Of a stretch of 64,000 nucleotides of DNA, positions 36,176 through 64,000 are shown one piece after another. The notes beneath the pieces are model-generated. The model was not told the DNA's origin and made no database searches. It saw only the letters and a program-made list of their open reading frames with translations. The stretch comes from Mobula birostris (taxonomy: Eukaryota), in assembly GCF_030028105.1 (NCBI RefSeq), contig NC_092398.1, forward strand, positions 25,311,649 to 25,375,648, written 5' to 3'. Position 1 is the first letter of the stretch. Each line of letters opens with the position of its first letter. Position numbers and translations under genes: made by a program.

Positions 36176-36447
36176 TCACTGGAGAGCTCATCTAGTGAGG
36201 TGTTGTGGGTGGAACTGAGAAATAAGAAAGGTATGACCACGATAATGGGACTATATAACAGACCACCCAACAGTCCGAGGGATGCAGAGGAACAAATCTG
36301 CAGAGAGGTCACAGGCTATTGCAAGAAACATAATGTAGATGGTTTTAACTTTGCACATATTGACTGGGACGCCCATACTGTAAAAGGATGAGATGGGATA
36401 GAGCTCGTCAAATTTGTTCAGGAGAGTTTCCAACCAGAGAGTACACA
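36176..36447 (+). mobile_element. CR1 ORF2 APE fragment (continues at ~40500)
   Basis: EVLWVELRNKKGMTTIMGLYNRPPNS. Confidence 0.82.
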
Positions 36448-39970: not shown

Positions 39971-40499
39971 GAGACCAATCACGTAAGGCCTCATAATCCC
40001 CAAGTGGTTCTTGGCCGCACATATTGAACACATTAAGAAGTATCCTCAGGGTTGGCAGGTTCACCGATTGTCTTTATTTCACCGTTTGGTTCAGGCCAGC
40101 ACTGTCTTATTGCACAACGTGTTTTTTGTAGGTCTGTAGAGAAAGTTGAGAGGATGTACTTGGCTTACTAATTGTTATATTGCATGAACTCATTCCATAC
40201 CACAAGTCAATGGATTCTGTTGGGCATCCTGGTTGCTAAATTATGCCTCCCCAATTATGTCTCTTTAAGGTTGGATGAGATTGTCGAATTTCAGACTTGT
40301 GTGACGATGAGTGCTCACCGCCTGCTGAGCTGTGTTCCTTTTTTTCTGGAAGTGACAGCTCTACCAACGGTTGGTCAGGTCTCAAGACTCAAGTTAGGGT
40401 GCCGTTCACTGTCCCCCTCCAAGAATCTTGTACCACCACCCCCCCCACGCCTTCCATTTCCTTTAACGGCCTCTTAGAACACTGCACCCGTTGAGAATC

Positions 40500-42420: not shown

Positions 42421-42539
42421 TGCTGCACTTCTCTATTACTCTGTAATAATAAAAACTGTAAATTACAATCAAAAGAAGAAAACTAAGTTAAATAAGTTGT
42501 ACAAATAGAGAAGGGAGAAATACTGAGGTAATGTTCATG

Positions 42540-43680
42540 GGTTCATTGTTCATTCAGAAATCTGATAACAGGGGGAAGAAGCTGTTCTTGAAATGTCCTA
42601 TGTGTGCATTCAGGCTCCGGTTCCTCAGCCTTGATGGTAGCAATGAGTAGAGGGCATGTCCTGGATGATGGGTTCTTAATCATGGATTCTGCCTCCGAGG
42701 CATTGCTTTAAGAAGGTGTCCTAGATGCTGGGGAGGCTTGTGCCCATGATGGAGATAGCTGAGTTTACCACTTGCAGTGGCACCACCATACCAGATGGTG
42801 ATGCAACCAGTTAGCATACCCTCCATGGTACCAATGTAGAAATTTGCACATGTCTTTGGTGACATACCAAATCTCCTCAAACCCCTAATGAAATATAACC
42901 ACTGTCATTCCTTCTTTGTATTTGCATCAATATGTTGGACCCAGGTAAGATCCTCAGAGATATGACGCCGGGGAACTTGAAACTATTCACCCTTTCCACC
43001 ATTCAATGAAGACTGGTGTGTATCCTCCTGACTTCCCCAACCTTCGTCTTGCAAAGTTGTTGCTGCCGCACCACTCACGCATCTGCCCTATTTCACTCCA
43101 TTGTGCCTCCCTGTCACAACTGAATTTCTGCCAACAATAGTTCTGTCATAGCTGTCAAATTTATAGATGGTGTTTGAGCTGTGCCTAGCCCCACAATCGT
43201 GAGTGTAGAGGGAGTAGAACAGTGAGCTAAGCCCTCATTCTTGAGTTGCGCCAGTGTTGATTGTCAGTGAGGAATTTTCAATCTGCACAGACTGTGGTCT
43301 CCCAGAGAGGAAGTCAAGGATGCAGCTGGAGAGGGAGATACAGAGGCCCAGGCTTTGGAGCTTGTTGATTTGTACCGAGGGTATGATTGTGTTGAATGCT
43401 GAGCTGTAGTTAATAAACAGCAGCCCGAGATAAGTATTACTATTGTCCAGGTGATCCAAGACCAGATGGAGAGCCAGTGATATTGCAAACACTGTAGATT
43501 TATTAGGTAAATTGCAGCAGGTCCAGGTCGGTGCTAAGGCAGGAATTGATTCCAGCCATCATTACCCTCTCGAAACACATCAGCACAGTAGATGTAGGTG
43601 CCACTGGGCAACAGTTGTTGAGACAAGTCACCCTGCTCTTCTTGGGCACTGGTATTACCGTCACTCCTTTGAAGCAGGTG
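42540..43680 (-). mobile_element. L2/Rex-like LINE RT fragments
   Basis: [13 protein letters not shown]...[16 protein letters not shown] and TVIPVPKKSRVTCLNN. Confidence 0.75.
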
Positions 43681-45369
43681 TGCACCTACTGTAGCTAATA
43701 AAGTGGCCACTGTTGTAACTTCAGGATCTTCTGCTGCAAGAGCACATCCACTTTAAGTTTTGACGTGTTGAGCATTCAGAGATGCTCTTCTGCACACCAC
43801 CTTGGTAACACGTGGTTATTTGAGTTACTATTGCCTTCCTGTCAGTTTGAACCATTCTTTTCTGACCTCTCAGCAGTTTCTGAGATGCTCAACCACCCCA
43901 TCTGGTACGAACAATCATTCCAAGGTCACAGTCACTTAGATCACTTTTCTTCCCCCACTCTGATATTTGATCTGAACAACAACTGAACCTCTAGACCACG
44001 TCTGCATGCTTTCATGCATTGAGTTGCTGCCACGTGATTGGCTGATTAGATATATGCATTAACAAGCAGGTGAACAGGTGTACCTAATAAAGTGGCCACG
44101 GTAGATCCAGTTGTGTAAGAAAACTGCCAAATCAGCTAAATTAGTGTTGAGTGTTTTGGAATCGTTTATTTTGTTCTGCAACTTAAGTCTGAGAAAATAG
44201 ATCCAATTCTACAACAAAATGACAAGGTAGGCTCAGTCAATGTTTCCAGAGCAAAATGCATACATTGCCACTCTACTATTTAGGGTCTTGTTTTTAACAA
44301 CCGTGTTATGTATCTCATTTGCTGAGTGTTTTGGAATAATTTATTTTGTTCCGTCCTGCAATTGGTCAATCAATGAGACTTCTCTTTCTAAAGTTCCTGC
44401 CCTCGCGCCGAGAAACTGGGCCATGCACTGAGCTTCTTCATGCTGAAGCCTACACAAGGACCCACTCTCACAGCAGCCTCTCCCAAAATGGCCGAACTGC
44501 TTGTCCCAAGCTTCATTGAAGACCTAACTTGTCTTCTCCCTTCGTCATCTTTCAGAATATTATAGAGTCATACAGTACGACAACAGGTCCTTCTGCCCAA
44601 CTGGTCTGTGCTGCTCCACGTTTCCATCTAAGCTAATCCAATTTGTAGTGTTTGCTCCATCTCCCTGTTAACCTTTCCTATCCATGCAGCATTTGATGGC
44701 TCTAGGCCTGGAGCTCAGAAGAATGATTGGGGTGGGGATTCTCATTGAAACCTATCAAATATCAAAAGGCCAGGATAGAGTGGGCGTGGAGAGGGAGTTT
44801 TCAATAGCACCAGGATCACAACCTCAGAATAGGAGACTTTAAATCAGAGATGAGGAGAAGTTTCTTTCGCTGGAACATGGTGAATCTATGGAATGCATTG
44901 CCACAGTCGGCTGTGGAGGCATAGTCATTGGGTACATTTAAAGCAGAGATTGACAGGTTCTTCATCAGAAAGGACATCAAATGTTATGGGAGGAAACAGG
45001 AGAATGGGGTTGAGAAAATAACAGAGCTAATAATGGATGGTGGAACAGTCTCGATGGACTGAATGGCCTAATTCTGCTCCTGTGTCTTATGCCTATGTAG
45101 CTGTCCAGGCGTATTTTAAACATTGTTAATATACCTGCCTCAACCATTCCATCCCAAACTCTGGCAGCTGGTTCCAGGTATGAACCACCCTTTCTGTGGA
45201 AAAGTAGTCCCTCAGGTTCCTATTACATCTCTCCCCTCTTACCTAACTAGTCCTCTAGTTCTTGATTCCCCTATCCTGGAAAAAAGGGCTATCTGCATTC
45301 ACCCGATTTATGCCCCTTGGAGATGCCACACACCCCTCCCATTGGGAAGAAGGTAGAAAAGACTGAAAG

Positions 45370-46320
45370 GAGTAACATGACAACTGGAGATGAGGTAAGA
45401 TTAGGGACTAGGTCAGGTTCAGGGCCCGCGGGCTTAGAGTTAGTGATGGGGGTTAGTGTTACAAATTGGGGTATGTGTCTCTGTCTCTCAGCCGCTCTGT
45501 TTCTCGCTCCCTCTCTCTGTCCCCCTCACCCTCCCTCTTTGTCTTCCTCCCGCTCTGCCACTCCCACTCCATTTCCCTCATCACCCCCACACTGTATCCT
45601 CTCTCTCTTCCCTCCCACTCTGTCTCTATCCCCCTCTGCCTCTGTTGTCCCCCCTGTCTTTCTCCCTTCATTTCCCTCTCTCTCTGTCTCTCCCTTTATC
45701 TGTTTCCCTCTTTTACTGTCCCCCTTTCTGTCGTTCTATCTTTCTGCCCCTCCACCCTCTCTTATTACCATTCATTATTAGCTGAGAACTTCTACCTCGT
45801 ATCAGAGTTTTAGAGAACCATAGAGCAAGTGAGCACAGAATCAGGCCTTTCAGCCCAGCCAATCAGTGTAATCCATGGTACCCACTCAGCTTCTCCCAAT
45901 TTCCTGAATTTGGCCAATATCCGTACAATCCTCACCATCCCAATGATGCACACTAATCTAAAGATGCTCTGGATATAAAACTGGCATTCTTTGCAAGCAA
46001 ATCTATGCAAATAGCTCTTCAGTGATACTATTGTATCTGCCTCAACCACTTCCTCTGACAGATCATTCCATCTGCTTACCACCCTCTGAATAAATAAATA
46101 GGTTGAACCACAGGTTCCTTGTATATGATCCTGTCTCACCCGACCATCGACAGTACAATTCCGTGTTGGTTTGCCTTCCCAGAATGCATCATTTTGTGTC
46201 ATCCAGAACCTCAGTGATCAGGCCTGGTGAATTTGTGACTAATCCTGTGGCAGCCCATTCCGAGACAACCTTCAACCTTCAACCACCACCCTCTGCTTCC
46301 TACCCCATCGAGTCTGTTCC
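45370..46320. repeat. Copy 1 of a local direct duplication (copy 2 at ~49662-50960)
   Basis: Shared non-TE start ggagtaacatgac(a/g)actggagatgaggtaaga, CT-rich tract and the same order of TE fragments. Confidence 0.8.
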
Positions 46321-46329
46321 ACCATGGTA

Positions 46330-47800
46330 ACATGGCTGCTCCATTTTCCCTCTCAGCTCCAATCTTGTGCCTTCTTTCTGCATCCCTTCATGCCCTGATT
46401 AATCAAGAATCCTATCAACCTCTACCTTAAATATACTTAAAGACTTGGCCTCACAGCCACCTGTAGCAAAAAAATTCACAGATTCACCACTCTCTGGCTA
46501 AATAAATTCCTCCTCATCTTCATTCAAAAAGAACATCTGTCTATTTTGAGGCTGTGTCCTCTGGTTTTAGATATTGCAACATAGGAAGCATCCGCTCCAT
46601 ATTCACTTCAAAGAGGCCTTTCAAGATTCAATAAGTTTCAATTTGGTCACCCCTCGTCCTTCTGAATTCCAGTGAGTGCAGGCCCAGAGCCATCAAATGC
46701 TCTTCCTATGACAAGCCTCTCAATCATGGAATTATTTTAATGAACTGCTCTTGAACCTTTCCAATGTCAACACATCCTTTGTTGGATAAGGGGCACAAAA
46801 CTGCTCAATACTGCAAGTGAGGCCTCACCAGTGCTTTATAAAGCCTCAACATTATATCCTTGCTTTTATATTCTAGTCCTCTTGAAATGAATACTCACAT
46901 CACATTTGCCTTCCTCACCACCAACTCAACCTTTAGGGAATCCTGCACAAGGACTCGCAAGTCCCCTTGCACCTCAGATTTTTGAATTTTATTTTCTACT
47001 TAGAAAATAATATACCCTTTTTATTTCTTCTACCAAAGTTCATAACCATACACTTCCTGACACTGTATTCATCTGCCACTTCTTTGCCTATTCTCTTAAT
47101 GTCTAATCCTTCTGTATTCTTTCTACTTCCTGAAAACTACATACCCCTTCATCTATTTTAGTATTGTCTGAAAACTTTACAACAAAGCCATCAATTCTGT
47201 CATCCAAGTCATTGACATATAACGTAAGAAGAAGCCATCCCAACACAGACCCCTGTGGAACACAACTAATTACTGGCAGCCAACCAGAAAAGGCTACCTT
47301 AATTTAAGTTCTTTGTCTCCTGCCAATTTGCTACTGTTTTCTCCATGCTAGTATCTTTCCTGTAATAACACAGATACTTATCTTGTTAAGCAGCCTTATG
47401 TGTGGCACCTTGTCAAAGGCCTTCTGAAGATCGAAGTACACAAAACTCACTGACTCTACTTTGTCTATCGTGCCTGTTATTTCCTCAAAGAATTCCAACA
47501 GATTTGACAGGCAAGGTAGCTCCTTAAGGAAACCATGGCCTATTTTATCATGTGCCTCCAAGTACCCACAAAACCTCTTCCTTGAGAATCGGCTCCAACG
47601 TCTTTCCAACCACTGGAGTCAGACTAATTGACCTACCATTTTCTTTCTTTTGCTTCTCTCCTTTCTTGAAGAGTGGAGTGACATTTGCAATTTTCCAGTA
47701 CTCCAAAACGATTACAAGATCTAGTGATTCTTGAAAGATCATTATGAATGTCTCCACGATCTCCACAGACACCTCTTTCAGATCTCTGGAGTGTAGTCCA
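46330..47800 (-). mobile_element. CR1 RT fragments
   Basis: YFDLQKAFDKVPHIRLLNKI and WKIANVTPLFKKG. Confidence 0.85.
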
Positions 47801-47908
47801 TCTCGTCCTTATTGCCTATCCCACAGAATATTCTCTGTTGCTCTGGCATTTTACTCTGAATTTTTTTTTTTTTGCTTTACCTTGTTCTACCTCAATGCAC
47901 CATGTAAT

Positions 47909-48548
47909 TGTAAGGGGTTTCTTCTTTTCTGTTACTGCGAAGGCTCTTAAAATGGCTTCTTTGTTATGTTAGAATTAAACATGGCGTGTCTGTAATAAAT
48001 ACTGTGATGTAAGGATGTTCTCTCTCTCTCTCTGCTTGTTTGGGTTATATTATTGATAAGGGAGCGAACGAACCAATGGGTGTCCATGTTAATCTTTCTG
48101 TGGGTGATATTCTGTCTCGTATGGCTGGGAACCGTATGGTTTGGCGGGCTTTTCGGGAGGCGACCCGGAGAAGAAGGACGTGCTGGAGGCGCTCTGGTCG
48201 ACCACCGTGGTTGGTCCCGAGCAGCAAGTCAGGGGGGTCAGAGAGGATCGCATGGTGGAGAGAAGACCCTGTTATTTGAGCTCCAACTTGTGTGCACAAA
48301 GAGGTTGAACTCTGATAAGTCTGGCGCCTTTTTCTTTCCCCTTTATATCGTATCTCTATTTATTTCATAGTTCCAGTAAGATTTATAAAGAGTAACTTGT
48401 AAATTGTACATTGTGTGCTGTCTGATATTTGATGTGTGAGTTTGTACCAGGTCGCATTATACAGCAATGACGCAACTGTGAGACACGGTTCGGCGGGCGG
48501 ACGGGGTTTCTCCTGGATAAACACGAGCCGATAGACCTGAGCGTTACA
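47909..48548 (+). mobile_element. Solo LTR
   Basis: tgtaagggg...gcgttaca with 4-bp TSD taat. Confidence 0.82.
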
Positions 48549-49661
48549 TAATGATTTGATCTGCATGAACGCTATGCAAGATGCACTTTTTATTGTTCTT
48601 TGCTGCATGCAACAATAGTAAAACAACTTATGTATGACTTGGTACACCTCTGCAAGGTCACCCCACATTCTCACTGCACCCTTCTTACAGCACCGCCAGA
48701 AGAGACCATAAGACACAGGAGTAGTTTTAGGCTTTTCGACCCATCTATTATGTTCTGCCTTTCCATCATCCCATTTTCCCTCTCTGCCCCATTCTCTAGC
48801 CTTGCCCGGTAACCTTTGACACCCTTACTAACCTAGAATCTATCAACCTCCACTTTAAAGACATCCCTTGTCTCGATCTCCACAGCTGACTGTGACAATG
48901 AATTTTACAGATTCACCGCTAAAGAAATTCCTCCTCATCTCTGTTCTAAAGCTGTGCCCTCTGTTCCTAGACTCCCCCATGATAAGAAATATTCTCTCCT
49001 CATGTTCTCTGTCTAGGCCTTTCACTAACTAGTAGATTACAATGAAATTCCCCCTGATTCTTCCAAACTCCAGTGAGTACAGGCCCAGAAAATCAAACGC
49101 TCCTCATAAGTTAACTCTTGCATTCCAGGAATCATTCTCATTCACATGAACCTCCTGTAGACTCCCTCCAACGCCAGCAAATCTTTTCTCAGGTAAAGGG
49201 CCCAAAACTGCTCACAATACTCTGACCTCTTCCCATCACACCATCCTGGGTTCTGAATGCACCTTACAGGGCAAGAAATAATTCACTTATATTTTTTCCC
49301 ATCTAGTCCACAGCATTCAATATTCATGCTGTGGTTTCTTCTACCAGAGGAACCAAACATAGGCTTAGGTGAGTGGCAGAATTCAGTCAGTGGGGGTGAG
49401 CTGAGACCTCCCATTCCCTACTGGAGGGAAGTCAGTGGCTTGAGTAGAAATGTCAGGGGGTGGGGGAGATGCAGCGAGGGAGACTCCCATTTCACGAGGA
49501 CTAGAATATAAAAGCAACAATGTCTTGCTGAAGCTTTTTAAGGCATTGGCGAGAGTATTGTGGACACTTCTAGGCCCCTTATTGAAGAAAGGATGTGCTG
49601 GAACTAACTCTAAGCCTCTAAACTAAATCCTAAACATTACCAGAAATTTATAATATGTCAG

Positions 49662-50960
49662 GAGTAACATGACGACTGGAGATGAGGTAAGAGTTGGGAC
49701 TAGTTCAGAGACTAGGGGCTTAGGGTTAGTAATGGGGGTTAGGGTTTTAAATTGGGGTATGGCCTTTGTCTCTCAGTCGCTCTTTTTCTGTCTTCCCCCC
49801 TGCACCATCTCCCCCATCAGCCCCCACTCTGTTTCCCCGAACCTTTCTATCTCTGCTTCTCCTCCTACCCTCCACCTGCCTCTTCTCCTTCCCTTCTCTC
49901 TCCCTCCTTCTCTCTCTCCCTCTCTCTCTTTCACCTTTCATTTTCCTCCCTCTCTGTATCTCTCTTTGTCCGTCTTTCTCTCTGTTACTGTCCACGTCCC
50001 TGTCCTTCCATGTTTCTTCCCCATGCCTTTCTGTTACTGCCCGGGACAGCTTCTAACTCATATCATAGAGTCTTGAAGAGTCAAAGAGCAGTCCAGCATG
50101 GATACAGGCCTTTCGGCTCAGCCAATCCATGTAAACCATGCTGCCCCCTCAGCTTGTCCCAGTTTCCTGAATTTGGACAATATCTCTCCAATCCTCACCA
50201 TCACAATGATGCACACTAATCTAAAAACACGGTAAATATAAAACAGCATGTCTCTTTGCAACCAAATCTATGCAAATACCTCTTCAGTGATACTGTTATG
50301 TCCGCCTCAACCACTTCCTCTTGACAGGTCATTCCATCTACTTACAACCCTCTGTGTAAATAAAAACGTTGATCCTCAGGTCCCATGTAAATGATCCTGT
50401 CTCATCCGGCCACTGACAATACAGTTCAACGTTTTCATATGATGTAATCTGAGCTTTCCGAATCTTTTTTCTAAATTTAAATTATATGATGAGAGGAGCA
50501 GAGTTAACGGCATTATTGAACATGTCCGACATAAGCTGTTGGTCTAGCCCTGTTTTGTTTTTTTTCTTGGGGTTTTTTTTTCTTTTGGGGTTTTTTTTGT
50601 TTATATATTTTTTTTTCTTTTTATTTTTTTTTAATGTTTAATTTCATTATGAGTTTGGAAGTCTTTTATATCTATGTTACTTAAAATTCATTTTATATAT
50701 GCTGATGAACATTTTTCCAATCTCTTCGTACCAACTTTGTTACTGAGTTTGTAATTTTTAAAAAATAATAAAAAGATTTAAAAAGAAAGAAAGACAATAC
50801 AGTTCTGTGTTGGTTTGCCTTCCCAGAATGCATCATTTTGTGTTGTCCACAACTTTAGTGATCAGGCCTGGTGAATTTGTGACCAACCCTGTGGCAGCCC
50901 ACTAGTCACCAGCTGCCATTCCGAGACACAACCTTCAACCCCCACTCTCTGCTTCCTGCC
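49662..50960. repeat. Copy 2 of the local direct duplication
   Basis: See 45370-46320. This copy carries an extra L1/Tx1-type insertion. Confidence 0.8.
50428..50792 (+). mobile_element. 5'-truncated non-LTR element (L1/Tx1-like 3' end)
   Basis: 13-bp TSD gacaatacagttc (50415-50427, 50793-50805), T-rich 3' UTR, aataa and A-rich tail. Absent from copy 1. Confidence 0.8.
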
Positions 50961-53900
50961 TCCTATCATAAGACCATAAGATATAGGAGCAGAGTAGGCC
51001 ATTTGGCCCATCGCATTTTCTCCACCATTTCATCATGGCTGATCCATTTTCCTTCTCAGCCACAATCTCCAAGCTTGGTATTGTACCTCAATACATGTGA
51101 AAATTGTAAAACAACTTAAGTTTGAAGGTGGGACAAAGTTAAGATGGCACCAAATGGTGACTCCTTTACTTGCATCTTTGGAAACACCTTTATTTCTATC
51201 TTAAATATCTCTTTTTTTCCCCTTTTCAGGGTGTCCTATTGACCTGGAGTTACACTCTGACCAGTTCTTTGCGGGAATGGAATCCGCTCTCAGGGCTCAT
51301 GACCTGCCGGTTTTTGATATCCCAAGGACGTGTCCTGGAACACGAGCACGCTCTCAGGGTTTCGGGATTTCGTGTCTCTGGGGAAGCGCTGACTCTAGGC
51401 TAGTGCCACTCACTGAAGCGTCGTGGGAGAACACGGAACATCAGGAGCCGCAGGTTAGCTGCCAGGGGTTGTGTGTCCGGGGAGCTGCGCCTTTCTGATG
51501 CCAAGTCTCTGGGCATACAGCTCGGAAAAAGTGACGCAACAGACTTTTAACATCGTAACTCAGCGAGTTGTTTGTTATGTCTCCCCTCTCACTGTGAAAC
51601 GAGGACTCCTCTTTTTCCCTTAGGAGGGAGAGAAAGAGCCTGTGGTACGTCGAATTACTGGGTGAACAAGTAGCTTTTGGCGAACTGCAAGTCTGTGTCT
51701 TTACTGATGCTTTGTTGCACGCTTGAGTGCTCAGTGGAGGGTGCTGATGCTTTTGTGCTGGTTGGGGTGGAAGGGTGTCATTGCCTTGATGCTGCTTGTG
51801 GGTGGGAGGGGGAGTTGGGGGGCACTTTGGTGTTCAAATGTTTTAACTGTCATTCATTCTTTGGGGCACTCCTCTGTTTTTGTGGATGTCTGCGAAGAAA
51901 AAGAATTTCAGGATGTATTTCGTATACATTTCTCTGACATAAAATGCACCTATTGAATGACCTTATACACCTCTACAAGGTCGCCCCATATTCTGACCAC
52001 CTCTCCTCTTACAGCACCTCCCCTTGCAACATACCATATGCCATAAGAGACCATAAGACATAAGAGAAGTGTTAGGTTATTCAGCCTATTGATTCTATTT
52101 TGCCATTCAGTCATGACTGATCTATTTTCCTTCTCTACCCCATTCTCCAGCCTTGTCCCATAACCTTTGACACCCTTTGTAACCATGAACCTATGACAAG
52201 AATCTCCCCTTGTAATATTGATCAGTGAGGCACACAGTATCTGTAATTACCGACAAGTAACCTTTATTGTCTCATCTGAAAAGCACATGGGTTCACAAAC
52301 TAACTACCTGTGTGGACCCCACTAGAATCCCTGATGCCCCCCCCATGAACAGTAAATAAAAAGAAAAGATATTACCCAGGGAAAGGAGGCTACACTGCCG
52401 AGGCGTTCTTCGTGTTTCCGAGTTCCACGTGTCCGTGGGATTCTCCTTATCCGTGATGGTTGGTGTCTGGCAGCTGGAGAGTTATTGCCCCGACATATTT
52501 AGAGCTCCTGGCTCTTATAGTGTTCCGCATCAATTGAACTGGTGGATCTCCATCCCATTGACTCAAGCTCACCTGACCTACCTGTGTCACCTTCTTATTG
52601 GTTCTAGTCCAGGGCTACAACCAACATTGTTTCATGGTTCTGCCCAGCTCACCCTTGTGTGTATGTGTCTTTCAACTCTGACTGGTCCAAACCAGTTTAA
52701 TGAGGTGACCCAGATAGACTCTAACGAGATTACAGGTTGCTTCTTTGGTAGGTCAGGCATTTTACATTATAAGTAGCTACTCGTCTGAGAATGGTCTCAG
52801 GTTTAGCAAGTCATTACCCGAAGCTGCTTGTGTCCACTTTCAATTGCTCTGATTAGGGTATCCAGGAGCAAGAAACAGTTCAAAGTCTACAAAATTGAGA
52901 GAACCAAAGACTGTCTGCTTCCCCTGTCCTTGATTCATCAAATCCAGTAATTGCAGATTGTAGTTTCTTCTGGCCAACATCTCCCTCCTCTTGATGCAAA
53001 AATATTTGCCAGGATCATTATCCTCCTCTCATTCAGTTGACTGCCCATAGGACTGCCATGGAACCCCCAATAGGTGTGCAATATTTACATTCTATAAATA
53101 ATATTAGCAGTTACTTACTAAATTCACCCAGTTTATACTGACAATCATCTTTGATGTTTCGTGAAAGTATTATCCTCTATTTTTTCCACTTTGTTCCATT
53201 ATTTCAGCCTTCCATCTTCTCAGTTGATATACATTGAGCAATACAATTATCAGGATACATAAAATTAGTATTACAGCGCCATGTGATACTACCCTCACCC
53301 ACGGATGTACTTAAACATTTGTTCCCCAATTGCAAAACTTACACTAAAAGCCTGGGTCACTCAATATTTCATTTGCCTTACCAGCACGTGTTTTAATTAC
53401 TTTAGTGAGCTCAGTCCATTGATGGATTATCTACCTTGACTTCTCCACAACACGTGTCCAGTCTGCAATCAAGTGAGGAATTGGTGGCAGCTCACTAACA
53501 ACATAAGTCCCACAGATATTCATTTGTATCAGAGCTTTGGATCCAGAAATTCTCCTTCATTACTGTGTCTCCTGCTGGCTGAGGCAAAGTTTCTTCTCCA
53601 ATGGCCAGATCTAAAGTCACATTCCCTTTGGCGGCATTGTGACTTTCCAAAGGGCATTGCTTCCATCCCTTGGTATAACTTGTGGCCCCTGTTGCTCTAT
53701 AACATTGTCTGTCCCACCAATCATATTGTAAATAGACTAATTATTCAGAGGCAAAGTAGACAATGAATAACTTTCATAAGTACTGAAACCACTATTTGTA
53801 AGCTTCTGCTTTGTAATTTCTTTTGAACAAGACCGGTGGACCTGATGGCATCTTGATAGTCTATCCCTTTCCCAGTACTATCATAATAATAGCATGTGTT

Positions 53901-55787
53901 GGTGGGTTAGTTAAGGATATCTTCTATTCTCATGATATTTACCAACGTTGTGAAACCTTTTCAAAGGGTAGGTTGAATTATTTCCATGTCAGGGAATGTG
54001 GAATACTGCTCCGAAATAAAACCTTCCTTTAAGGCTTCTTATATGATACAATGGCACCCTTTGTCTGACCCATTCTTTTATCTGCTCATCTGAGACCCAA
54101 TTAAGTACTTGATGTGCATCAAGTTGCAATAAATTAGTGCCAAGGGGTGCCAATCGTGCAGACAGTAGCACCAGCTCCCACTGGTAGGGTGTTGGTGGGA
54201 GTTCCTCGGGAAACGGTGCTTCGTAGTTATCGTAGCCGTATCGAGTAGCTTCATCTGCTAAATCATGCCAATCAATATCTCCATATTCACCTTCCTCCCC
54301 TTTTTCAGATCCAAAAGCACATATTATTCCTCGCTGTGCAGAAAGTTGGTCCTGCAGCTTTTGAATCTGCTTTAAACTCTTTGCATGTTCGCCAGTGTTA
54401 CTCTTGCTCTCCTGTGCTGATTTCTGAATCACATTCATAGCCGTCTTTAAATCACCGCACTGTTTCCTTAATCCCTCCACTTCATCCTTCGCTAGTTCGA
54501 CTGCTTCCTCTAGTTTACTTTTTTCTTTGTAATGGCTCACACTTCAAATGAAACTGGTTCATAAGCAATTAAGCATCAACTCCATACCTCACTGACCCTG
54601 GAAATCAGTAACCCTTTCTCTAAAGGTTTCTATCCCCCTTTGCAGCCTTTTGTGTTCTCCTTCTAACCTAGCTCGCTGGCGTCTGCGTTATGCTGCTATT
54701 CTAGAATTTCCTGTCGTAACCTATCTCGCTGGGCTTCAGTTTTCTTCTGATATGCTAGGATTTCCTGTTGTAATCTTTCCCGCTCGGCTTCTGCCTTATG
54801 CCGACATTTGTTTTTCGTGTCTGATCTGTGCCGTTCTGCTTTGGCATTCTGTCATAATTCTATCAAATCCTCAATTAAACAGGCAAACGCTACTTTTTTT
54901 TTGCAATTGTTTAAACTTCCTGCCCGACAGCTTCCCTGGAGCAACTTTCCACAGGGCATCCCCAACAGTTTTCCCTTCACAGCCAGGGGGGCCGACTAGC
55001 ACCTCATATTGCGGCCACATCTCCAACACATATTTCTGGAGGTATCCGCTCCAACCAAAACAACCCAAGATCTTCGGACTTGTAGAATTTCCTGAATTCT
55101 TCATCTTGGGTTAGTAACCGCTAACTACCCAGCCCCAGACCTCTCTACCTCACCCATGTGGTCCGACTCGAGTCTCCCGCTGAATGAAGAGATTTATCCC
55201 CGAGCACCCAACAGCGGACGCCAACTCTGTTACAAGAATCATCATCCTTTGTAATAATTATCAGTGAGGCATAGAGAATTTGTATTTACCGACAAGTAAC
55301 TTTATTTGTCTTATCTAAAAAGCACGTGGTTTCACAAACTAACTATGTTTGTGCAACCTACTAGACTCCCTGCCCGCCCTCACCCCGCCCAGTTACCCGG
55401 GAAAGGAGTCTGTCCTGGCCAGGCGTTCCTCGCAGTCCCGATCTCCACGTGTCCAGAGTGTCCTTCTTATCCGCGACGGTTGGTCTCTGGTTGCTGCAGG
55501 GTCTTCACCCCTGTGTATTTTGAGCTCCTGACTCGTTGTGTTCCTCAGAAATTGAACTGGTGGATCTCCATCCCATTGGCTCAAGGTCACCTGACCTACC
55601 TAGGTCACCTTCTCACTGATCCTTATACAGAGCTACAACCAATTTTGTTTCATGGTTCTGCCCAGCTTGTGTATTTGTATCTTTGGTGCAAAGCAGTTAA
55701 ATGAGGCGACCCAGACAGAGTCTAACGAGATTACAGATGGTTTCTTTGGCAGGGCTAGCACCTTACGCAAATAGCTACTTGTCTGAA

Positions 55788-57143
55788 AGAGACTTGTTCT
55801 GGATTCTCCGGCCGATGGTCAGGCCACACTTAGATCCCCTCCAGTTCGCCTACCAGCCAAGACTAGGAGTTGAGGATGCCATCGTCTACCTGCTGAACCG
55901 TGTCTACGCCCACCTGGACAAGCCAGCGAGCACTGTGAGGGTCATGTTTTTTCACTTCTCCAGTGCGTTCAACACCATCCGCCCGGCTCTGCTGGGGGAG
56001 AAGCTGACAGCGATGCAGGTGGATGCTTCCCTGGTGTCATGGATTCTTGATTACCTGGCTGGCAGACCACAGTGTGCTTGCAACACTGTGTGTCCGACAG
56101 AGTGATCAGCAGCACTGGGGCTCCACAGGGGACTGTCTTGTCTCCCTTTCTCTTCACCATTTACACCTCGAACTTCAACTACTGCACAGAGTCTTGTCAT
56201 CTTCAGAAGTTTTCTGATGACTCTGCCATAGTTGGATGAATCAGCAAGGGAGATGAGGTTGAGTACAGGGCTACGGTAGGAAACTTTGTCACATGGTGTG
56301 AGCAGAATTAACTGCAGCTTAATGTGAAAAAGACTAATGAGCTGGTGGTACACCTGAGGAGAGCTAAGGTACCGGTGACTCCTGTTTCTATCCAGGGGGT
56401 CAGTGTGGACATGGTGGAGGATTACAAATACCTGGAGATACAAATGGACAATAAACTGGACTGGTCAAAGAACACTGAGTCTGTCTACAAGAAGGGTCAG
56501 AGCCGTCTCTATTTCCTGAGGAGACTGAGGTCCTTTAACATCTGCTGGACGATGCTGAGGATGTTCTACGAGTCTGTGGTGGCCAGTGCTATCATGTTTG
56601 CTGTTGTGTGCTGGGGCAGCAGGCTGAGGGTAGCAGACACCAACGGAATCAACAAACTCATTCGTAAGGCCAGTGATGTTGTGGGGATGAAACTGGACTC
56701 TCTCACGGTGGTGTCTGAAAAGAGGATGCTGTCTAAGTTGCTGCCATCTTGGACAATGTCTCCCATCCACTACATAATGTACTGGGTGGGCACAGGAGTA
56801 CATTCAGCCAGAGACTCATTCCTCCGAGATGCAGCACAGAGCATCATAGGAAGTCATTCCTGCCTGTGGCCATCAAACTTTACAACGCCTCCCTTGGAGG
56901 GTCAGATAGGCTGGTCCTGGACATTTCATAATTTACTGGTATAATTTACATATTACTATTTAACTATTTATTACTATTTTCTATTACCATTCTATTACTA
57001 TTTATTATTTCTATGACTATTACTATTACTATTTACTAATTGTAATATTACTATTACTATTTGTATTACTATTTATTATTTATGGTGCAACGGTAACGAA
57101 AACCAATTTCCCCCGGGATCAATAAAGTATGACTATGACTATG
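55788..57143 (+). mobile_element. Rex1/Babar-like LINE, 5'-truncated, inserted in an LTR
   Basis: LDPLQFAYQPRLGVEDAIVYLL, MFFHFSSAFNTI, KGQSRLYFLRRLRSF. 3' tail (tatgac)n. Confidence 0.88.
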
Positions 57144-57306
57144 AAATGGTCTCAGGTTTAACGTCATTACCTGAAGCTTCTTTGTGTCAACATTCAATTA
57201 CTCTGATTAGATTATCCCAGAGCAATAATCAGTTCAGAGTCCACAAAATGGAGCGGGAGGGGAAACAGAGATAATTAGTTTGTCTGCTTCCCCGTTTTGA
57301 TACGTC

Positions 57307-57399
57307 TGTAATGTACCCCTAGGGTTCATATTTTCTGAGGACTGTCACTTTAAAATGTCGGGAGAATGAGACTGACTTTTGGACACTGTTTGAGCTGCT

Positions 57400-57443
<44 letters not shown>

Positions 57444-58605
57444 TTATTTGATGGACAATCGATGTTATGGTTTCTCTGCAGCTTGTTTTGAATATACAAG
57501 GACACACAGACACACACAGTTAGAGTGAAGATGGATTAGGTCGATGGAAGACACCAGTGAGTTGGTCGCTGGTTTAAACTTTTAGTAGCCCAAAACGGGT
57601 GAGTTGAGATCGATTCTGAGTATTGACAAATGACTCTCACAAGTTTTCTGCAACTAGGCCAAGTTTGCAGGAAGAGAAGAGAGGAGAGATAGGTTTGAAA
57701 CAGAAGAAATCTAGAGACAAAGAGATCACTGTTTGGACTCTCTCTCCAAGTAGCCCGTGAAGGTGAGTTGGTTTCTATTCAACTGCAAAAGTGTGATTGT
57801 CACTTAGTTAATCCACAGGAGTGGGTTCTCTGGTGAGGGGAAAACCTTTGTGAACACCACGTGTGTGTTTACCCTTTTGTCTGGGTGTGGTAGTTCACTG
57901 AAGAACTACCCTGTGGCAAATCACTGTTGCAGTTATTTCGTATGTCGCGGAACTGGTAAGTGGCTATCATGTTGTGTGTTTGGGGTAACCTTGTGGAACC
58001 TACCGGTGTGTCGACCCTTTGCCTGGGTGGTGGTTCCCTTGAAGAGGGGCCCCTTTGTGATAAGCTACTATTGGTGATAATCCATACGTGGATTCTGTTG
58101 GAGTATCCTGTGGCCACCACTTTGAGATGTCCCATAGCTGAATTCGGGCATGGTACCACTTGTGTTAAAAGGATATTTGTTGAAGATCACTGTCGGTGAA
58201 ATTTTGTGTGTGGAGTGGAACAACTTCGGAGATAAAACCTATTACTATTGTTATTTTGTATTGCTGTCATGGAATCTGTGGAATATCGATGTAATTGCCT
58301 TCTCACAACATCCGCCTTTGAATTACAAACATCTCGCATTAATTAGCCCGTGCATCACGAACTGAATTTACTTCGCTTACATACCATCGTAAGACTGTAT
58401 CAATTACCACCTAAGCTTGAAGAAGTTTAGGTTCTGTATTTCCACACCTATATATGCATAAACTGTGCTAACCTGTTCGATTTATCTGATTTTATGTTAC
58501 TTTATTACGTAGTTACTAATAAAATAGAATTAGTTAACAGCAAAACCAGACTCCAGGTGTGTTCCATTTCTGCTGGTTCTTTAACCCATTACGGGGTACA
58601 TAACA
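57307..58605 (+). mobile_element. Solo LTR nested in the provirus LTR
   Basis: tgtaatgtacccc...ggggtacataaca with flanks cgtc/catc. The 3' end resembles the solo LTR at 25996-26827. Confidence 0.85.
57402..57438. repeat. (GA)n microsatellite
   Basis: Direct reading. Confidence 0.95.
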
Positions 58606-59925
58606 CATCAATCCACTGACTGCATAACATAGTTTCTTCTGGCCAGTAGTATATTTCTCCCAATTACGTTACCCTACACCCTATAACTCAGGTTCTCAAA
58701 TCTCATCAACGTATTGTAATCTTTTTCTGTACACTTTTAATCTTATTGATATTCTTCCTTAGGTGAGTGATAAAAACTACACAATACTCCAAATTAGGCC
58801 TCACCTACGTCTTACACAATTTCAATGTAATATCCCAAACTCCTGTACTCAGTCCATTGATTTATGAATGTCAATGCACCAAAAGCTCCCTTCACAACCC
58901 TATCTACCTGTGACACCTCCTTAAAGGAATTATTCACATTTAAACTCATCAGGGCTCACTTTATTCACGGGAATAATTATTTCATTATCATTCATACATT
59001 AAAAATAAAATTGCGCAGGCAGGGGTGTTAAAAGACAACATCCAACAGCCTAGAAAATCAGCCAGTCTGGCACATCATTAGGATTTTGCAGCATTGTAGC
59101 ATAGCAGTTAGCAAAATGCCATTAAAGCGCCAGCAATCACCAATCGGAGATCAATTCCTGCTGCTGTCTGTAAGGAGTTTGTACTTTCTCCCCATGACGG
59201 TGTGTGTTTCCTCCAGGAGCTCCCGTTTCCTCCCACGTACAGTTAGGGTTAGCAAGCTGTGGGCAGGCTAACCTGGTGCCAGAAGCATGGTGACACTCGC
59301 AGCCTGCCCTTGGCACAATCTTCACTGATTGATTCGATGCAAACATCGCATTTCACTGTCTGTGTCAAGGTACATGTGACAATAAAGCCAATCTTCACCT
59401 TAATCTTTAAGAAGACAGATAGATTTCTGCAAGTAGAAGTCATCGAAGAGTGTGAGGAAAGAACAAAAGCATCATGTTTTGATGGGATTAGACATTATCG
59501 TAATGAATGAGGCAAAATACTTGAGGTGTAAGTGAAATAACACAGAGATACTGGAAATCTTGGGCAATTCCAATCAGGTATCTGCAGTGTTTTTTTTCCT
59601 GAGTTTCACAGACCTCAAAAGCCAACCACCTGTTCCAGCTTATATGAAGAGGGTTACCTTCAAGATGGGCCAATATGCACTGACCCCCTGAATCTGCCCG
59701 GGTCTGTGGATTCACGTGGGCAGGAGGAATGAGGACAGGTGATCCCTTTGGTGCACAAGTTGGCGAGGCTGGAGTTGAAGGTCCTTTCACTGGCAGGTCC
59801 TGGGGTCAATAACAAATATCGAAGCCTGAAGGTCAAACGGAAGTCTGGAGGTTGATATCGCCAAGATCATCGGAGGTTGGATGCTCAAAGGCGGACTGTC
59901 CTGGCGTTGGAGGACCATCTGTGTG

Positions 59926-59929
<4 letters not shown>

Positions 59930-59995
<66 letters not shown>
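59930..59995. repeat. (GT)n microsatellite
   Basis: Direct reading. Confidence 0.95.
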
Positions 59996-59997
<2 letters not shown>

Positions 59998-60689
59998 TGG
60001 GTGGTCGGGAGGAATGAAGTCTGCTTTGTTGTCGTTGATTTATTGCTGTTCTGTTGTTGTTTTGTTGCTCGTATTGTTCTGATAAACATTATGTTGGCGC
60101 CAGAATGTGTGGCGACCTTAAGTTATGTTGGTTGTTAATGCAAACGACATATTCCTCTGTATGCTTGCTTTCAATATACGTGTGACAAATTAATCTTTAT
60201 CGTTACCTTTAAGAAGAAAGATAGATTTCTGGATGTAGAAATTATCAAAGTGAGTAAAGAAAGAGAAAGAATATGTTGAGATCAGAGTATCAGTTCCCAA
60301 TTATATTGAATGCAGCAAAAGGCTTGAAGTATTGAAATAGGCAAGTGAAAAAACACGGAATAGATTTAGTGGCTATCCACTTGATATCATCTTGTAGACC
60401 TCCATGAAGTCATCTCTTGCCTTCCTTCGCTCCAAAGAGAAAAGCCTGAGCTCGCTTAATCTTTTCTAAGACATGCTCACCAATCCAGGCAGAATCCTGG
60501 TAAATCACCTCTGCACCCTCTCTAAAGCTTCCATGTCCTTCCTATGAGGTAACCAAAACTGAACACACTACTCCAAATGGGGTCAAACCAGAATTTAATT
60601 GAGCTGCAACATTACCTCCTCACTCTTGAATTGAATTCCCTGACTAATTGAAGGCAAGTACACCATACCCTTTCTTAAAGCGTAACAGT

Positions 60690-61260
60690 GGAAATGTGAG
60701 CAGTTTCCAGTTCTTGGGTGTTAACACCTCTGAAGATCTAATCTAGGTTCAACATATTGATGCAATTACAAAGAAGTCTCAATGGCGGCTGTATTTCATT
60801 GGGAGTTGGAAGAAAATTGGTATGTCACTACGGACACATGCAGATTTCTATAGATGTGCTATGGGGAGCATTCAAACTGGTTGCATCGCAGTTTGGTAAG
60901 GCAAGGCCGTGACACAGGATCAGAAAACTCTGTAGAAAGTTGTAAACTCAGCCAGCGGCATCATGGGCACTAGCTTCCTCAACATCCAGGACATCTTCAA
61001 AAGGCGATACGTCAGGCAGGTAGCATTCATCACAAAGGACCCCATCACCTAGGACATGTCTTCTCTTTGCTACCATCAAGGAGGAGGTATGGGAGCCTGA
61101 GGAGGCACATTCAATGTTTCAGGGACAGAATCTTCCCATCGTCCATCAGATTTCTGAATGGACAATGAACCCATGAACACCACCTCAGAATTTTTCCCTC
61201 TCTTTTTGCACTACGAATTTAATTTTATATGTCCTTCTTATTGTAATTCATAGTTTTATA
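60690..61260 (+). mobile_element. L2/Rex-like LINE 3' fragment
   Basis: Same 3' region family as 13940-14350 and 19080-19480. Confidence 0.65.
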
Positions 61261-62008
61261 TGTCAACAAGACAACAAATCAACAATTTACATGACATAAA
61301 AGGCATCCGTTAGTCTTACGAGACCATGGATCTGCACTTGGAAGGTCTTCACTCTCCAGGGCACAGTCCTGGGCAAGGTTGTATGGAAAACCGGCAGTTG
61401 CCCATGCTGCAAGACTCCCCTCTCTACGACACCAATGTTGTCCGAGGGAAGGGCACTAGAATCCATACAGCTTGGCACCAGTGTCGTCGCAGAGCAATGT
61501 GTAATTAAGTGCCTTGCTCAAGGACACAACACATGCTACCTCGGCTGGGGCTCAAACTCATGACCTTCAGGTCACTAATCCAATGCCTTAACTACTTGGC
61601 CACATTACGTATGCCAGTGGTATTAAACCTGATCTGATAACTTGTCCTATCAATCTTTGAGCGATCTATGGATGTGAGCCCCAAGATCCCTTTGCTTCTC
61701 CCCACTATTCATTAGAGGCATGCCTAGTTCTGGTCTACAGCACTACAGCTGGGGTGGCTTCTGTTCCGGTAAACTTTGTTGTATCCAATACTCTCAGCCA
61801 TTTCTGATAGTCACGCGGTCAACGTAAGTGTGGTCTAACAAGTGTGTTGTCTAACATGGGAGCAAAGGGATTGAAATTGTAACTTATGGTCAGATGGAAC
61901 CTGCAACTCAGAAGACAGAAATCACCATGTTTCATGCAATTCATTCGCAACACACCCTACCCTTGAGACGACTCTTCAACTATCCTTCTTCTCAATTGTG
62001 TTCATCAG

Positions 62009-62288
62009 GGAAGACAGTCGACTCCAACACAGCTCTGTGGTTCTCAGAAACAGGCCTGCGATTTGGTTACGATGGCAAAGACGACACCTGTTTTGATTTC
62101 TCTGTCAGGAAATCTGTGGCCAGTATTCCACTGTTGGAAGACTTTATCAGTGGTCTGAGCCACCACAAACCCTGTCTTTGAAGTCAACCGTACCAAGGAA
62201 GTTCTGATCCTGAATGCCAAGCTGTCTACATCATAACATCATGGAAGTTATGTTGAACTTGGAACAGAGCCAACTCGACAAATGCAAG
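62009..62288 (+). pseudogene. Degenerate MHC beta1 / class I alpha2-like exon (candidate W-category WB)
   Basis: Polypyrimidine tract plus catcag acceptor. Reads RFGYDGKDDTCFDFSVRKSVASIP, with a later Cys about 49 codons after the Tyr. 280 nt (out of frame), internal stop, donor would be GC. Confidence 0.5.
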
Positions 62289-62803
62289 GCAAATTGCTGA
62301 CAACAGCGCCCCCACCAGTTTCTTTACAAAACTACATTTATTATAAATTCAAACCACTGCAGTGTTCTGATACACTGCATTACAAACAAAAACCAGGCAA
62401 ATCATGTCTAACACAGATTAAGCTAACACATTCCTATCCTCAGTGAGGATAACATTTAGCTCCTCCCCCCCCCCCACCAAAGGAATCCCCCTGTCCCTCA
62501 AACATTGCCAGGTAATCAGCTCAGTCAGAACCCTCCACTACCCACCTCCAAAACACACAGGTAATTATCTTACCCAGCTACCAGGAGCAGGTTAACTAGG
62601 ACATCCACCTTTCTCCCTGACCCTCTGTACTGGATAACCAAGGATGAAAATGGTGTGGCTAACAGTGTCCCCACCTTCTGTGCATTGACACAGTAAGGTC
62701 AGTCAGCATAGGAGCAGGCCCTGTGGCCCATCATGACTATGCTGTCCATCAGAGTCACACAGCTCGGGAACAGGCCTTGTTCCTGTCAGTAACCTTATGT
62801 ACA

Positions 62804-64000
62804 TGTAATGCCCTGGTTAGTATTTTTTTTACTGTTATGCTGTTCTGTATCTCATTTTATGCTGTTCTGTGCAAGCTGCTTGTTTTTAGCTTATGTTTGG
62901 GTTATTGTTGAAGATAAGAGATAGGAGAATTGCGTGCTATCCAATTATGGGCAATTACGGGTAATGTGAGATCGCTGGGAAATAAAATGGATGAGTTGAC
63001 AGCACTATCCAGGAGTCAGAGAACATTTTGGGAGTGCGGTGTTATGTGTTTTACTGAAACGTGGCTGCACGAGGACATACCTGACCAAAACGTTTCCATA
63101 AAGGGCTTCCAGACCGTTTGGGCTGACTGGAAGTGCACTGAGAGCAGTAAGCGTAAAGGAGGGGGGCTTGCTGTGCTGGTTAACGACAGATGGTGCAGTC
63201 CGGGTCATATTACGATCAAGGAACGTGTTTGTAGCCCGGATATTGAACTTTTTGCTGTTAGACTCAGGCCATATTATTTGCCAAGGGAAATCTCACATTC
63301 AATTGTGGTTGCTGTGTACATCCTCCCTCTGCCAACCCGAGATCGGTGTGTAACATCATTTATACCGTTAGGCACAGGAGTACATTCAGCTAGAGACTCA
63401 TTCCACCGGGATGTAGCACTGTCATGGAAAGTAATTCCTGCCTGTGGCCATCAAACTTTGCAGCTCCTCCCTTGGAGGGTCAGACACCCTGGGTCAATGG
63501 GCTGGTCCTGGACTTATTTCCATCTGGCATGGTTTACATATTATTATTTGAATGTTTGTGGTTTTGTATTGCTATGTTTGTACTCTGTCCTTGGTTGGTG
63601 CAACTGTAACGAAACCTAATTTCCCTTGGGATCAATAAAAGATGTCTATCTATCTATCTATCTATCTATTAGGATGGTTGGATTAAGGGAGGTTTCTCTG
63701 GTGAGGGACACTAAGGCTGGGCTTGGGGATCTTGTCAGAGAGAGATGAAGAGAGAAGACGCAGGAGAGAAGAGGTTGTAGGGTTCGACCCAGAGCAAGAC
63801 CATGATTCGACAAAACCTGGGGTGATCGATGGAGGATCACCGATGGGGAAACGGTGAGCTCCAACTTGTGCACATTAGACTTTTTCACAAAAATGGGCCC
63901 TTTTCTTTTTTTTTGTTCTTTCTTTACTAACCCTTTAGTCAAGTTAGGAATTGTAAAGCTAAATCTTTTAACTGTATGCATTGTATTGTCTGTAATTTCA
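62804..64000 (+). mobile_element. LTR (window-truncated) interrupted by a Rex1-like element
   Basis: Starts tgtaatgccc and resumes after 63669. Shares gagctccaacttgtg with the LTR at 47909-48548. Confidence 0.6.
62941..63669 (+). mobile_element. Rex1-like LINE with internal deletion (APE start joined to 3' end)
   Basis: GNVRSLGNKMDEL, CFTETWL, KRKGGGLAVLVN. 3' end like 56790-57143, with a (ctat)n tail. Confidence 0.82.

What the first reader, a model, noticed from the sequence alone, without database searches (positions are those of the whole stretch)
62009..62288. Candidate WB (beta-chain) pseudo-exon: possible decayed head-to-head W pair
Seen: a non-repeat segment with a good acceptor encoding FGYDGKD..FDF...K.VAS.P. 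This resembles the class I alpha2 AYDGKD motif and the class II beta1 strand pattern, at about the right exon length, but it is frameshifted with a stop. Known: W-category beta chains carry class I alpha2-like features in beta1, and WA/WB genes are reported as linked pairs. Inference: the leader on - at 35.8 kb and this exon on + form a divergent WA/WB pair, the decaying half of a duplicated locus.
Basis: partly seen in the sequence, partly recalled or inferred. Interest (0 to 1): 0.72.

Follow-up and report, generated by a model that had tools for sequence, protein, structure and literature searches.

The report
Dead W-category MHC beta-chain exon
This stretch is a real but broken first-domain exon of a dead W-category MHC beta-chain gene in a manta-like ray, left next to an orphaned first exon of its alpha-chain partner; it is an ordinary relic of gene-family turnover.

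Summary
Frame 3 from 62011 reads ...LRFGYDGKDDTCFDFSVRKSVASIP... behind an AG acceptor at 62007-62008, in the same intron phase as real WB beta1 exons. It stops at a TGA at 62179-62181.

It is homologous to WB beta1:
- BLASTP against the intact neighbouring WB beta1 gives E 3e-7.
- The profile-profile comparison gives 95.7% probability, E 9e-9.
- An HMM of intact ray WB beta1 exons finds it as the only other hit in 94 kb (E 2e-5).
- Published shark WB sequences also match.

A broken IgC1 (beta2) exon follows 4.2 kb downstream, 2.4 kb past the window end. It is closest to houndshark WB_DS1 and to the ray's own WB beta2.

The exon-equivalent is 62009-62216, not 62009-62288. Against older copies it lacks 12, 5 and 35 nt, and its GT donor is lost.

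All 10 copies of this lineage found on the contig are broken. Older copies lie 4-9 kb head-to-head from WA leader exons. The block from the orphan WA leader (35.8 kb, minus strand) to the pseudo-exons is collinear with a locus where that leader heads a complete WA gene.

The decay predates the local duplications. The intact WB lies 9.4 kb to the right on the plus strand, with its own leader, not to the left.

This is a known family and of low interest. The scan had already noted the beta2 remnant and the orphan leader.

The parts
62009..62216 (+). Pseudo-exon for the beta1 (membrane-distal) domain of a dead W-category beta-chain gene, called 'type D' here. It is 208 nt, against about 261 nt inferred for the ancestor.
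   Evidence: It aligns with intact WB beta1 exons from acceptor to donor. 208+12+5+35+1 = 261 nt, which is the length of the intact type B beta1 exon.
62007..62008 (+). Retained AG splice acceptor (ttcatcAG|GG), phase 1.
   Evidence: It sits at the same position and phase as the acceptors of intact WB beta1 exons. In the older copies L006-L008 it has mutated to TG.
62179..62181 (+). Premature TGA stop. It follows a 5-nt deletion between 62171 and 62172.
62217..62218 (+). Position of the lost splice donor (CC where older copies have GT of GTAAGT).
62195..62196 (+). Site of a 35-nt deletion relative to the older type D copies. A further in-frame 12-nt deletion lies between 62011 and 62012.
35791..35866 (-). 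Orphan WA (alpha-chain) leader exon, the head-to-head partner remnant of the pseudo-WB. It lies 26 kb upstream on the opposite strand.
   Evidence: The same arrangement recurs at 25.55-25.58 Mb. At 28.70-28.72 Mb the leader heads a WA gene with an open alpha2 exon.
35669..64000 (.). Block collinear at 92-95% with the WA-leader / pseudo-WB unit at 28.69-28.72 Mb. It runs on past the window end to about +4.2 kb and takes in the beta2 pseudo-exon at L009:2429-2701.
   Evidence: The part from 51328 onward is also duplicated at 99.6% and 97.6% identity 202 kb downstream.

Best explanation
The stretch is the decayed beta1-domain exon of a dead W-category MHC beta-chain gene (a WB pseudogene of a divergent, WB_DS1-like lineage, 'type D'). 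It does nothing now. It cannot be spliced correctly because the donor is lost, and it cannot be translated through because of the frameshifts and the stop. Its beta2 (IgC1) exon lies 4.2 kb downstream and is equally broken.

The pseudogene sits where the beta-chain partner of a WA_DS10-like alpha-chain gene belongs, head-to-head with a WA leader exon. That is the published arrangement of W pairs. Here the WA body was cut away about 120 bp into intron 1, so only the leader remains.

The pseudogene was already dead when segmental duplications copied the unit several times. An intact WB gene ('type A') with its own leader, beta1, beta2 and TM exons lies just downstream on the same strand. It is the likely working beta chain of the locus.

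Shown: the homology, the lesions, the copy map and the collinearity. Inferred: that type D was once the functional partner of WA, and that the downstream WB took over.
For: Homology:
- BLASTP gives E 3e-7 against the neighbouring WB beta1.
- hhalign of the type D family against intact WB beta1 types A, B and C gives 95.7% probability, E 9e-9.
- The HMM scan of 94 kb gives E 2e-5, the only hit besides the real exon.
- Pairwise BLASTP of the older copy gives 38 bits against ray type B and 27 bits against great white shark WB_DS1L and WB_Nds5L from the paper's supplement.
- Intact WB beta1 types A and B reach Pfam MHC_II_beta above the cut-off. The intact WB beta1 profile (types A-C) hits class II beta1 in the PDB at E 9e-6.

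The beta2 pseudo-exon:
- It has the same acceptor and donor as WB-A beta2.
- It is 45% identical to houndshark WB_DS1 beta2 (E 5e-17) and 47% to ray WB-A beta2.
- In the whole genome its only relatives at E<=0.001 are WB beta2 exons.

Lesions:
- beta1 has deletions of 12, 5 and 35 nt, a TGA stop and a lost donor.
- beta2 has deletions of 5 and 1 nt. Cys>Tyr and Cys>Ser changes are shared by all four beta2 copies.
- All 10 type D beta1 copies found carry stops, frameshifts or lost splice sites.

Position:
- WA leaders lie 3.9, 4.9 and 9.3 kb head-to-head from L006, L007 and L008, 21 kb from L005 and 26 kb from the window copy.
- The block is collinear with the 28.7 Mb unit.
- W pairs are published as head-to-head, including WA_DS10L/WB_DS1L in great white shark.

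Separate gene: the WB-A leader exon (L009:6348-6465) is conserved in frame with type B genes and lies downstream of the beta2 pseudo-exon.

Expression: four possible RNA runs gave no contig over most of the exon (zero depth at L029 1001-1200; the exon is L029 1009-1216).
Against: - The 56-aa piece alone hits nothing in Pfam or the PDB.
- The type D profile found no true relative among 1.84 billion representative proteins; its one hit is a low-complexity repeat.
- No type D leader or TM/cytoplasmic exon was found, so a once-complete gene is inferred from two exons only.
- Assignment to the DS1 subgroup rests mainly on the beta2 piece. The beta1 scores do not separate DS1 from Nds5.
- The read data are contigs of runs only guessed to be RNA, so the lack of coverage is not evidence of silence.
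Confidence: 0.87

Rival explanations
1. The two pseudo-exons are leftovers of a local duplication of only the beta1-beta2 exon pair of the neighbouring WB gene. They never belonged to a complete gene that partnered a WA gene.
For: No leader or TM exon of type D was found. In the five younger copies the pseudo-exon always lies 9-22 kb upstream of an intact-looking WB beta1 exon on the same strand.
Against: - The WB-A and WB-B leader exon lies downstream of the beta2 pseudo-exon, so the relics are outside that gene.
- The older copies L006-L008 stand next to WA leaders with no type A or B WB detected close downstream.
- Type D is far more divergent from types A and B (28-33% in beta1, 42-47% in beta2) than A is from B (about 40% and 80%).
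- The beta2 piece is as close to houndshark WB_DS1 as to ray WB-A.
Confidence: 0.07
2. The exon is still used, for example as an alternative or non-coding exon of a transcript from the WB locus.
For: The AG acceptor and pyrimidine tract are intact. One contig of a possible RNA run of a related species runs through the beta2 pseudo-exon, unspliced.
Against: - The donor is lost, and there are a premature stop and two frameshifting deletions.
- Depth is zero over L029 1001-1200 in four runs.
- Identity between copies is the same in the exon as in its flanks (92-96%), as expected for neutral drift.
Confidence: 0.04
3. The match is a chance ORF-like resemblance, or a remnant of a class I alpha2 exon and not of a WB gene.
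For: The best PDB hit of the type D profile is a class I alpha2 stretch, at a weak E of 0.029. Pfam is silent.
Against: - The significant matches are to WB beta1.
- A WB-type beta2 pseudo-exon follows.
- All copies lie in W clusters beside WA genes.
- According to the 2021 paper, WB beta1 corresponds to class I alpha2 and shares its motif.
Confidence: 0.02

Closest known systems
W-category MHC beta chain WB_DS1 of sharks (Okamura et al. 2021, PNAS, PMC8713811), head-to-head partner of WA_DS10 in great white shark
   Same: - Class II-type beta1 exon followed by an IgC1 exon, both in phase 1.
- The class I-like Y-D-G-K-D motif in beta1.
- ILPN (P57) and no Trp at position 61 in beta2.
- It lies head-to-head with a WA_DS10-like leader.
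- The beta2 piece is 45% identical to houndshark WB_DS1.
   Different: - It is dead: frameshifts, a stop, a lost donor and lost Ig cysteines.
- No leader or TM exon was found.
- beta1 is too divergent to place in DS1 as against Nds5.
- It lies 26 kb from the WA leader, against a few kb in the older copies.
Banded houndshark WB_DS1_n2, called 'a possible pseudogene' in the SI of Okamura et al. 2021
   Same: A second, probably dead WB_DS1-type copy next to WA_DS10, known from its Ig-like exon only.
   Different: The houndshark copy was seen in a read-through cDNA with a normal splice junction. Here no transcript was seen and the defects are visible in the DNA. Orthology was not tested.
The intact WB genes of this same ray (type A at L009:6348-9817 with its TM exon at L019:1818-1919; type B at 25.59, 28.68, 28.84 and 29.06 Mb)
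   Same: Same exon borders and phases, the same strand, and the same cluster. They are the best sequence matches of the pseudo-exon.
   Different: Those have open beta1 and beta2 exons. They also have a conserved leader, and type A a TM exon. They share only 28-33% identity with type D in beta1.

Membership tests
W-category MHC beta chain (WB) | Class II beta-type exon order (leader, beta1, IgC1 beta2, CP/TM/CY) with phase-1 borders | tested here: inconclusive
   The beta1 and beta2 pseudo-exons are present in the right order, 4.2 kb apart, with WB-type borders. No leader or TM exon was detected.
W-category MHC beta chain (WB) | Significant sequence similarity to WB beta1 domains | tested here: met
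   BLASTP E 3e-7. hhalign 95.7%, E 9e-9. HMM E 2e-5 in 94 kb. Pairwise hits to published shark WB_DS1L and WB_Nds5L at E about 3e-5.
W-category MHC beta chain (WB) | Class I alpha2-type interface residues A32, G35 and D37 in beta1 (Okamura 2021) | tested here: inconclusive
   The motif reads G-Y-D-G-K-D, so G35 and D37 are present and position 32 is Gly, not Ala. The mapping to the paper's numbering is my own inference, from the spacing and from the class I alpha2 hit RFGYDGRD.
W-category MHC beta chain (WB) | beta2 with P57 and without the class II Trp61 (mostly G61) | tested here: met
   The beta2 pseudo-exon keeps ILPN (P57). Positions 59-61 are removed by the 5-nt deletion in three copies, and the copy that keeps them has no TGG there. 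The intact neighbour reads ILPNRDGTYQ.
W-category MHC beta chain (WB) | Linked head-to-head with a WA gene | tested here: met
   A WA leader lies on the opposite strand 26 kb upstream here, 21 kb upstream at 28.7 Mb (with a WA alpha2 exon open beyond it), and 4-9 kb upstream for L006-L008. The WA alpha2 exon in the window carries the beta2-microglobulin-like L-S-F-x-K-D-W motif and resembles little skate WA_DS10.
Functional gene (as against pseudogene) | Open frame, usable splice sites, conserved Ig cysteines, transcripts | tested here: not met
   TGA at 62179. Deletions of 5 and 35 nt. Donor GT replaced by CC. beta2 has deletions of 5 and 1 nt and has lost both cysteines. No contig coverage at L029 1001-1200, most of the exon; this is weak evidence.
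Classical MHC class II beta / MHC class I heavy chain | Direct match to Pfam MHC_II_beta or MHC_I | tested here: not met
   No Pfam hit for any type D translation at E<=10. The genome-wide protein search with the older copy returns only type D copies and WB type B, and no classical class II locus.

The most novel reading that the evidence does not exclude
In this ray the beta-chain gene that occupies the canonical head-to-head position beside WA_DS10-like genes is dead in every copy found (10 of 10), while the WA genes and a tandem-derived WB (types A and B) further downstream remain open. If so, the W heterodimer here has switched to a beta chain encoded by a different, non-adjacent paralogue. 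That would be a natural partner replacement within this MHC category, and it would make type D a fourth WB lineage in cartilaginous fish, so far seen only as a pseudogene.
Probability: 0.35. Interest if true: 0.4.

Novelty: new member of a known kind. Interest (0 to 1): 0.27.

Why it matters
It matters little beyond annotation. It shows that the W-category cluster of a manta-like ray evolves by the same birth-and-death process as other MHC families. It explains the orphan WA leader at 35.8 kb as half of a former head-to-head pair. It also warns annotators not to merge these relic exons into the intact WB gene just downstream. For specialists, the dead beta chain at the canonical partner position raises a modest, testable question: which WB now pairs with WA_DS10-like chains in rays?

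Tried and rejected
- Pfam and PDB searches with the 56-aa piece alone gave nothing at E<=10. Pfam on the older copies gave nothing relevant.
- A profile of the type D lineage against 1.84 billion representative proteins gave one hit, a low-complexity repeat protein, judged spurious.
- A TM pseudo-exon between the beta2 pseudo-exon and WB-A was sought with tblastn and nothing significant was found.
- A type D leader upstream of the pseudo-exon, here and in four other units, was sought with blastn and tblastn and nothing was found.
- An 81-bp block conserved between type A and type B upstream regions was first taken for the WB leader. It has no signal-peptide reading and was rejected. The true leader was found 0.8 kb further on.
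- The idea that the pseudo-exons sit in intron 1 of WB-A was rejected for the same reason.
- Read laying showed only repeats covered. There was no support for transcription of the exon, and no verdict on its absence.
- My first alignment of the copies was useless, because half the loci were on the other strand. It was redone.
- One search failed on a frame error and was repeated.

Full report
**1. What is there**

The window is G000:C34:25311649-25375648 of a 4.0-Gb genome. Earlier notes of this scan call it a manta-like ray.

At 62009 an exon-like segment begins behind a pyrimidine tract and an AG (62007-62008). The first two bases complete a split codon. The frame then reads KTVDSNTALWFSETGLRFGYDGKDDTCFDFSVRKSVASIPLLEDFISGLSHHKPCL and ends at a TGA at 62179-62181.

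On its own this 56-aa piece matches nothing in Pfam or among solved structures, even at E<=10.

**2. It is one of a family of copies**

A DNA search of the genome found eight copies, all on the same contig:
- an identical copy 202 kb downstream;
- three copies at 92-96% identity (28.70, 28.83 and 29.07 Mb);
- three older copies at 78-82% identity (L006 at 28.88 Mb, L007 at 29.02 Mb, L008 at 28.61 Mb).

A protein search with the older copy added two more, at 31.05 and 25.13 Mb.

Aligned on one strand, the older copies carry 12, 5 and 35 nt that the window clade lacks. They also have a GTAAGT donor where the window has CC (62217-62218). The exon-equivalent in the window is therefore 62009-62216. 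Adding back the deletions, plus a 1-nt deletion specific to the older clade, gives 261 nt. That is exactly the length of the intact 'type B' WB beta1 exon.

The copy at 31.05 Mb keeps the CAG acceptor and one reading frame from FGYEGKD on to ...FVPIIAEN, in register with the upstream GMRVSQ... apart from one TAA stop codon. The ancestor was therefore a full-length domain exon.

Every copy is broken in some way:
- lost acceptor (L006-L008 and the 25.13 Mb copy);
- a 1-nt deletion (the same clade);
- CGA>TGA or TAA (L007, L008, 25.13 Mb, 31.05 Mb);
- the three deletions and the lost donor (the window clade).

**3. What it is homologous to**

The scan's notes pointed to a WB beta1 exon 7.4 kb past the window end. 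I fetched it (L009:7438-7668).

- BLASTP of the candidate against it gives 28% identity and 62% positives over 47 aa, E 3e-7.
- The genome holds several intact-looking WB beta1 exons, which I call types A, B and C.
- A profile-profile comparison of the candidate family against them gives 95.7% probability, E 9e-9.
- An HMM of the intact exons, run over all 3,064 stop-free six-frame pieces of the window plus 30 kb, finds the real exon and then this piece at E 2e-5. The next hit is at E 1.4.
- tblastn gives 30.0 bits, against a maximum of 26.6 bits for 400 shuffled queries.

Types A and B reach Pfam MHC_II_beta above the curated cut-off. The profile of the intact exons (types A-C) hits class II beta1 domains in the PDB at E 9e-6.

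The candidate family's own best PDB hit is a class I alpha2 stretch, RFGYDGRDFISFD.

Using sequences printed in the supplement of Okamura et al. 2021:
- the older copy scores 27 bits against great white shark WB_DS1L and WB_Nds5L, and 38 bits against ray type B;
- ray type C is clearly Nds5-like (51% identity);
- ray type B is DS1-like.

**4. The predicted IgC1 exon follows**

At L009:2429-2701, 4.2 kb downstream of the candidate, lies an exon with the same acceptor (CCACTGCAG|TGAA) and donor (TTTGGG|GTAAGG) as the intact WB-A beta2 exon. It has deletions of 5, 1 and 3 nt. Both Ig-fold cysteines are replaced by Tyr and Ser, and these two changes are shared by all four copies of this exon.

Its first 55 residues are 45% identical to banded houndshark WB_DS1 beta2 (E 5e-17) and 47% identical to ray WB-A beta2. 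The matches to DS3 and Nds5 are weaker.

In the whole genome its only relatives at E<=0.001 are WB beta2 exons, not the classical class II genes on another contig.

It keeps the W and class I type P57 (ILPN). It has no Trp codon at the position where conventional class II invariably has Trp61.

No TM relic was found.

**5. Relation to the intact WB next door**

I located the WB-A leader exon at L009:6348-6465. It is an ATG-started signal peptide ending in a GTGAGA donor. Type B genes conserve it in frame, through in-frame indels of 27 and 6 nt. The rest of the gene is beta1 at L009:7438-7668, beta2 at L009:9536-9817 and a TM exon at L019:1818-1919.

The leader lies downstream of the beta2 pseudo-exon. 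The two relics are therefore outside the WB-A gene, not in its first intron.

**6. Head-to-head pairing**

Okamura et al. report head-to-head WA/WB pairs in sharks, teleosts and coelacanth. In great white shark the pairs include WA_DS10L/WB_DS1L.

The WA gene in this window is DS10-like. Its alpha2 exon reads ...SEKPAVFGEVNTLTCFVSGFFPP... and carries the beta2-microglobulin-like LSFGKDW motif.

Copies of the WA leader lie on the opposite strand:
- 3.9, 4.9 and 9.3 kb from L006, L007 and L008;
- 21 kb from L005;
- 26.3 kb from the window copy and from its twin at 25.58 Mb.

Window 35669-68162 is collinear at 92-95% with 28.69-28.72 Mb. There the same leader precedes a WA gene with an open alpha2 exon. 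In the window the homology stops about 120 bp into intron 1, so the WA body was cut away.

**7.

- No WB match lies on the minus strand to the left of the window, between 25.16 and 25.37 Mb.
- The decay is old. The window-clade lesions are shared by five copies that differ by up to 8%. The cysteine losses are shared by all the beta2 copies. The pseudogene was therefore carried along by the duplications, not made redundant by them.
- The exon ends at 62216, not 62288.

**8. Expression**

No run on record as RNA holds the region. Contigs of four runs guessed to be RNA were laid on L029, which is 25372649-25378648.
- Only repeats were covered.
- Depth was zero at L029 1001-1200, most of the exon (L029 1009-1216).
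- One contig of a related species ran unspliced through the beta2 relic.

This gives no support for use of the exon. It is not proof of silence.

**9. Verdict**

This is a confirmed pseudo-exon of a known family, the W-category described in 2021. It is a new pseudogene member in a species the paper did not cover. The closest precedent is the 'possible pseudogene' WB_DS1_n2 beside WA_DS10 in houndshark.

The one mildly interesting point is that the gene at the canonical partner position is dead in all ten copies found, while a downstream tandem WB is open. Which beta chain the ray's WA_DS10-like chains now use is left open.

Noticed in passing
L009:6348-6465 (6.3 kb past the window end): Leader exon of the intact WB type A gene. 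It is a GC-rich, ATG-started signal peptide with a GTGAGA donor, and type B genes conserve it in frame despite indels of 27 and 6 nt. It may be missing from automatic annotation.
   Followed up: yes
window 51328-64000 and on to +4.6 kb, against C34:25565000-25582394: A segmental duplication 202 kb away, 99.6% identical over 14 kb and then 97.6%. The orphan WA leader further left is only 96% identical to its twin. This mosaic could reflect gene conversion or an assembly duplicate.
   Followed up: partly
C34:28563864-28564040 (L017) with a beta2-like exon at 28578840: A third intact-looking WB lineage ('type C'). It is 51% identical in beta1 to great white shark WB_Nds5L and carries cysteines that types A and B lack.
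   Followed up: partly
C34:28877488-28878578 (L023:7488-8578) and the matching places beside L007: A roughly 1.1-kb minisatellite with a period of about 33 or 66 bp, lying between the WA leader and the older pseudo-exon copies.
   Followed up: no
C34:31042537-31046818 (L038): A further decayed W pair. A WA alpha2 exon with a TAA stop on the minus strand lies only 4 kb from a type D beta1 exon on the plus strand. That beta1 copy keeps the acceptor and the ancestral frame.
   Followed up: partly
L029:5351-6000: One 1.3-kb contig of a possible RNA run of a related species covers the beta2 pseudo-exon and its downstream intron without splicing, at 96-97% identity. It could be unspliced RNA, DNA carry-over or a paralogue.
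   Followed up: no
window 14471-14734 and C34:25410831-25411094: The WA alpha2 exon in the window has a 99% identical inverted copy 85 kb to the right, so the intact WB-A gene lies between two inverted WA copies.
   Followed up: partly
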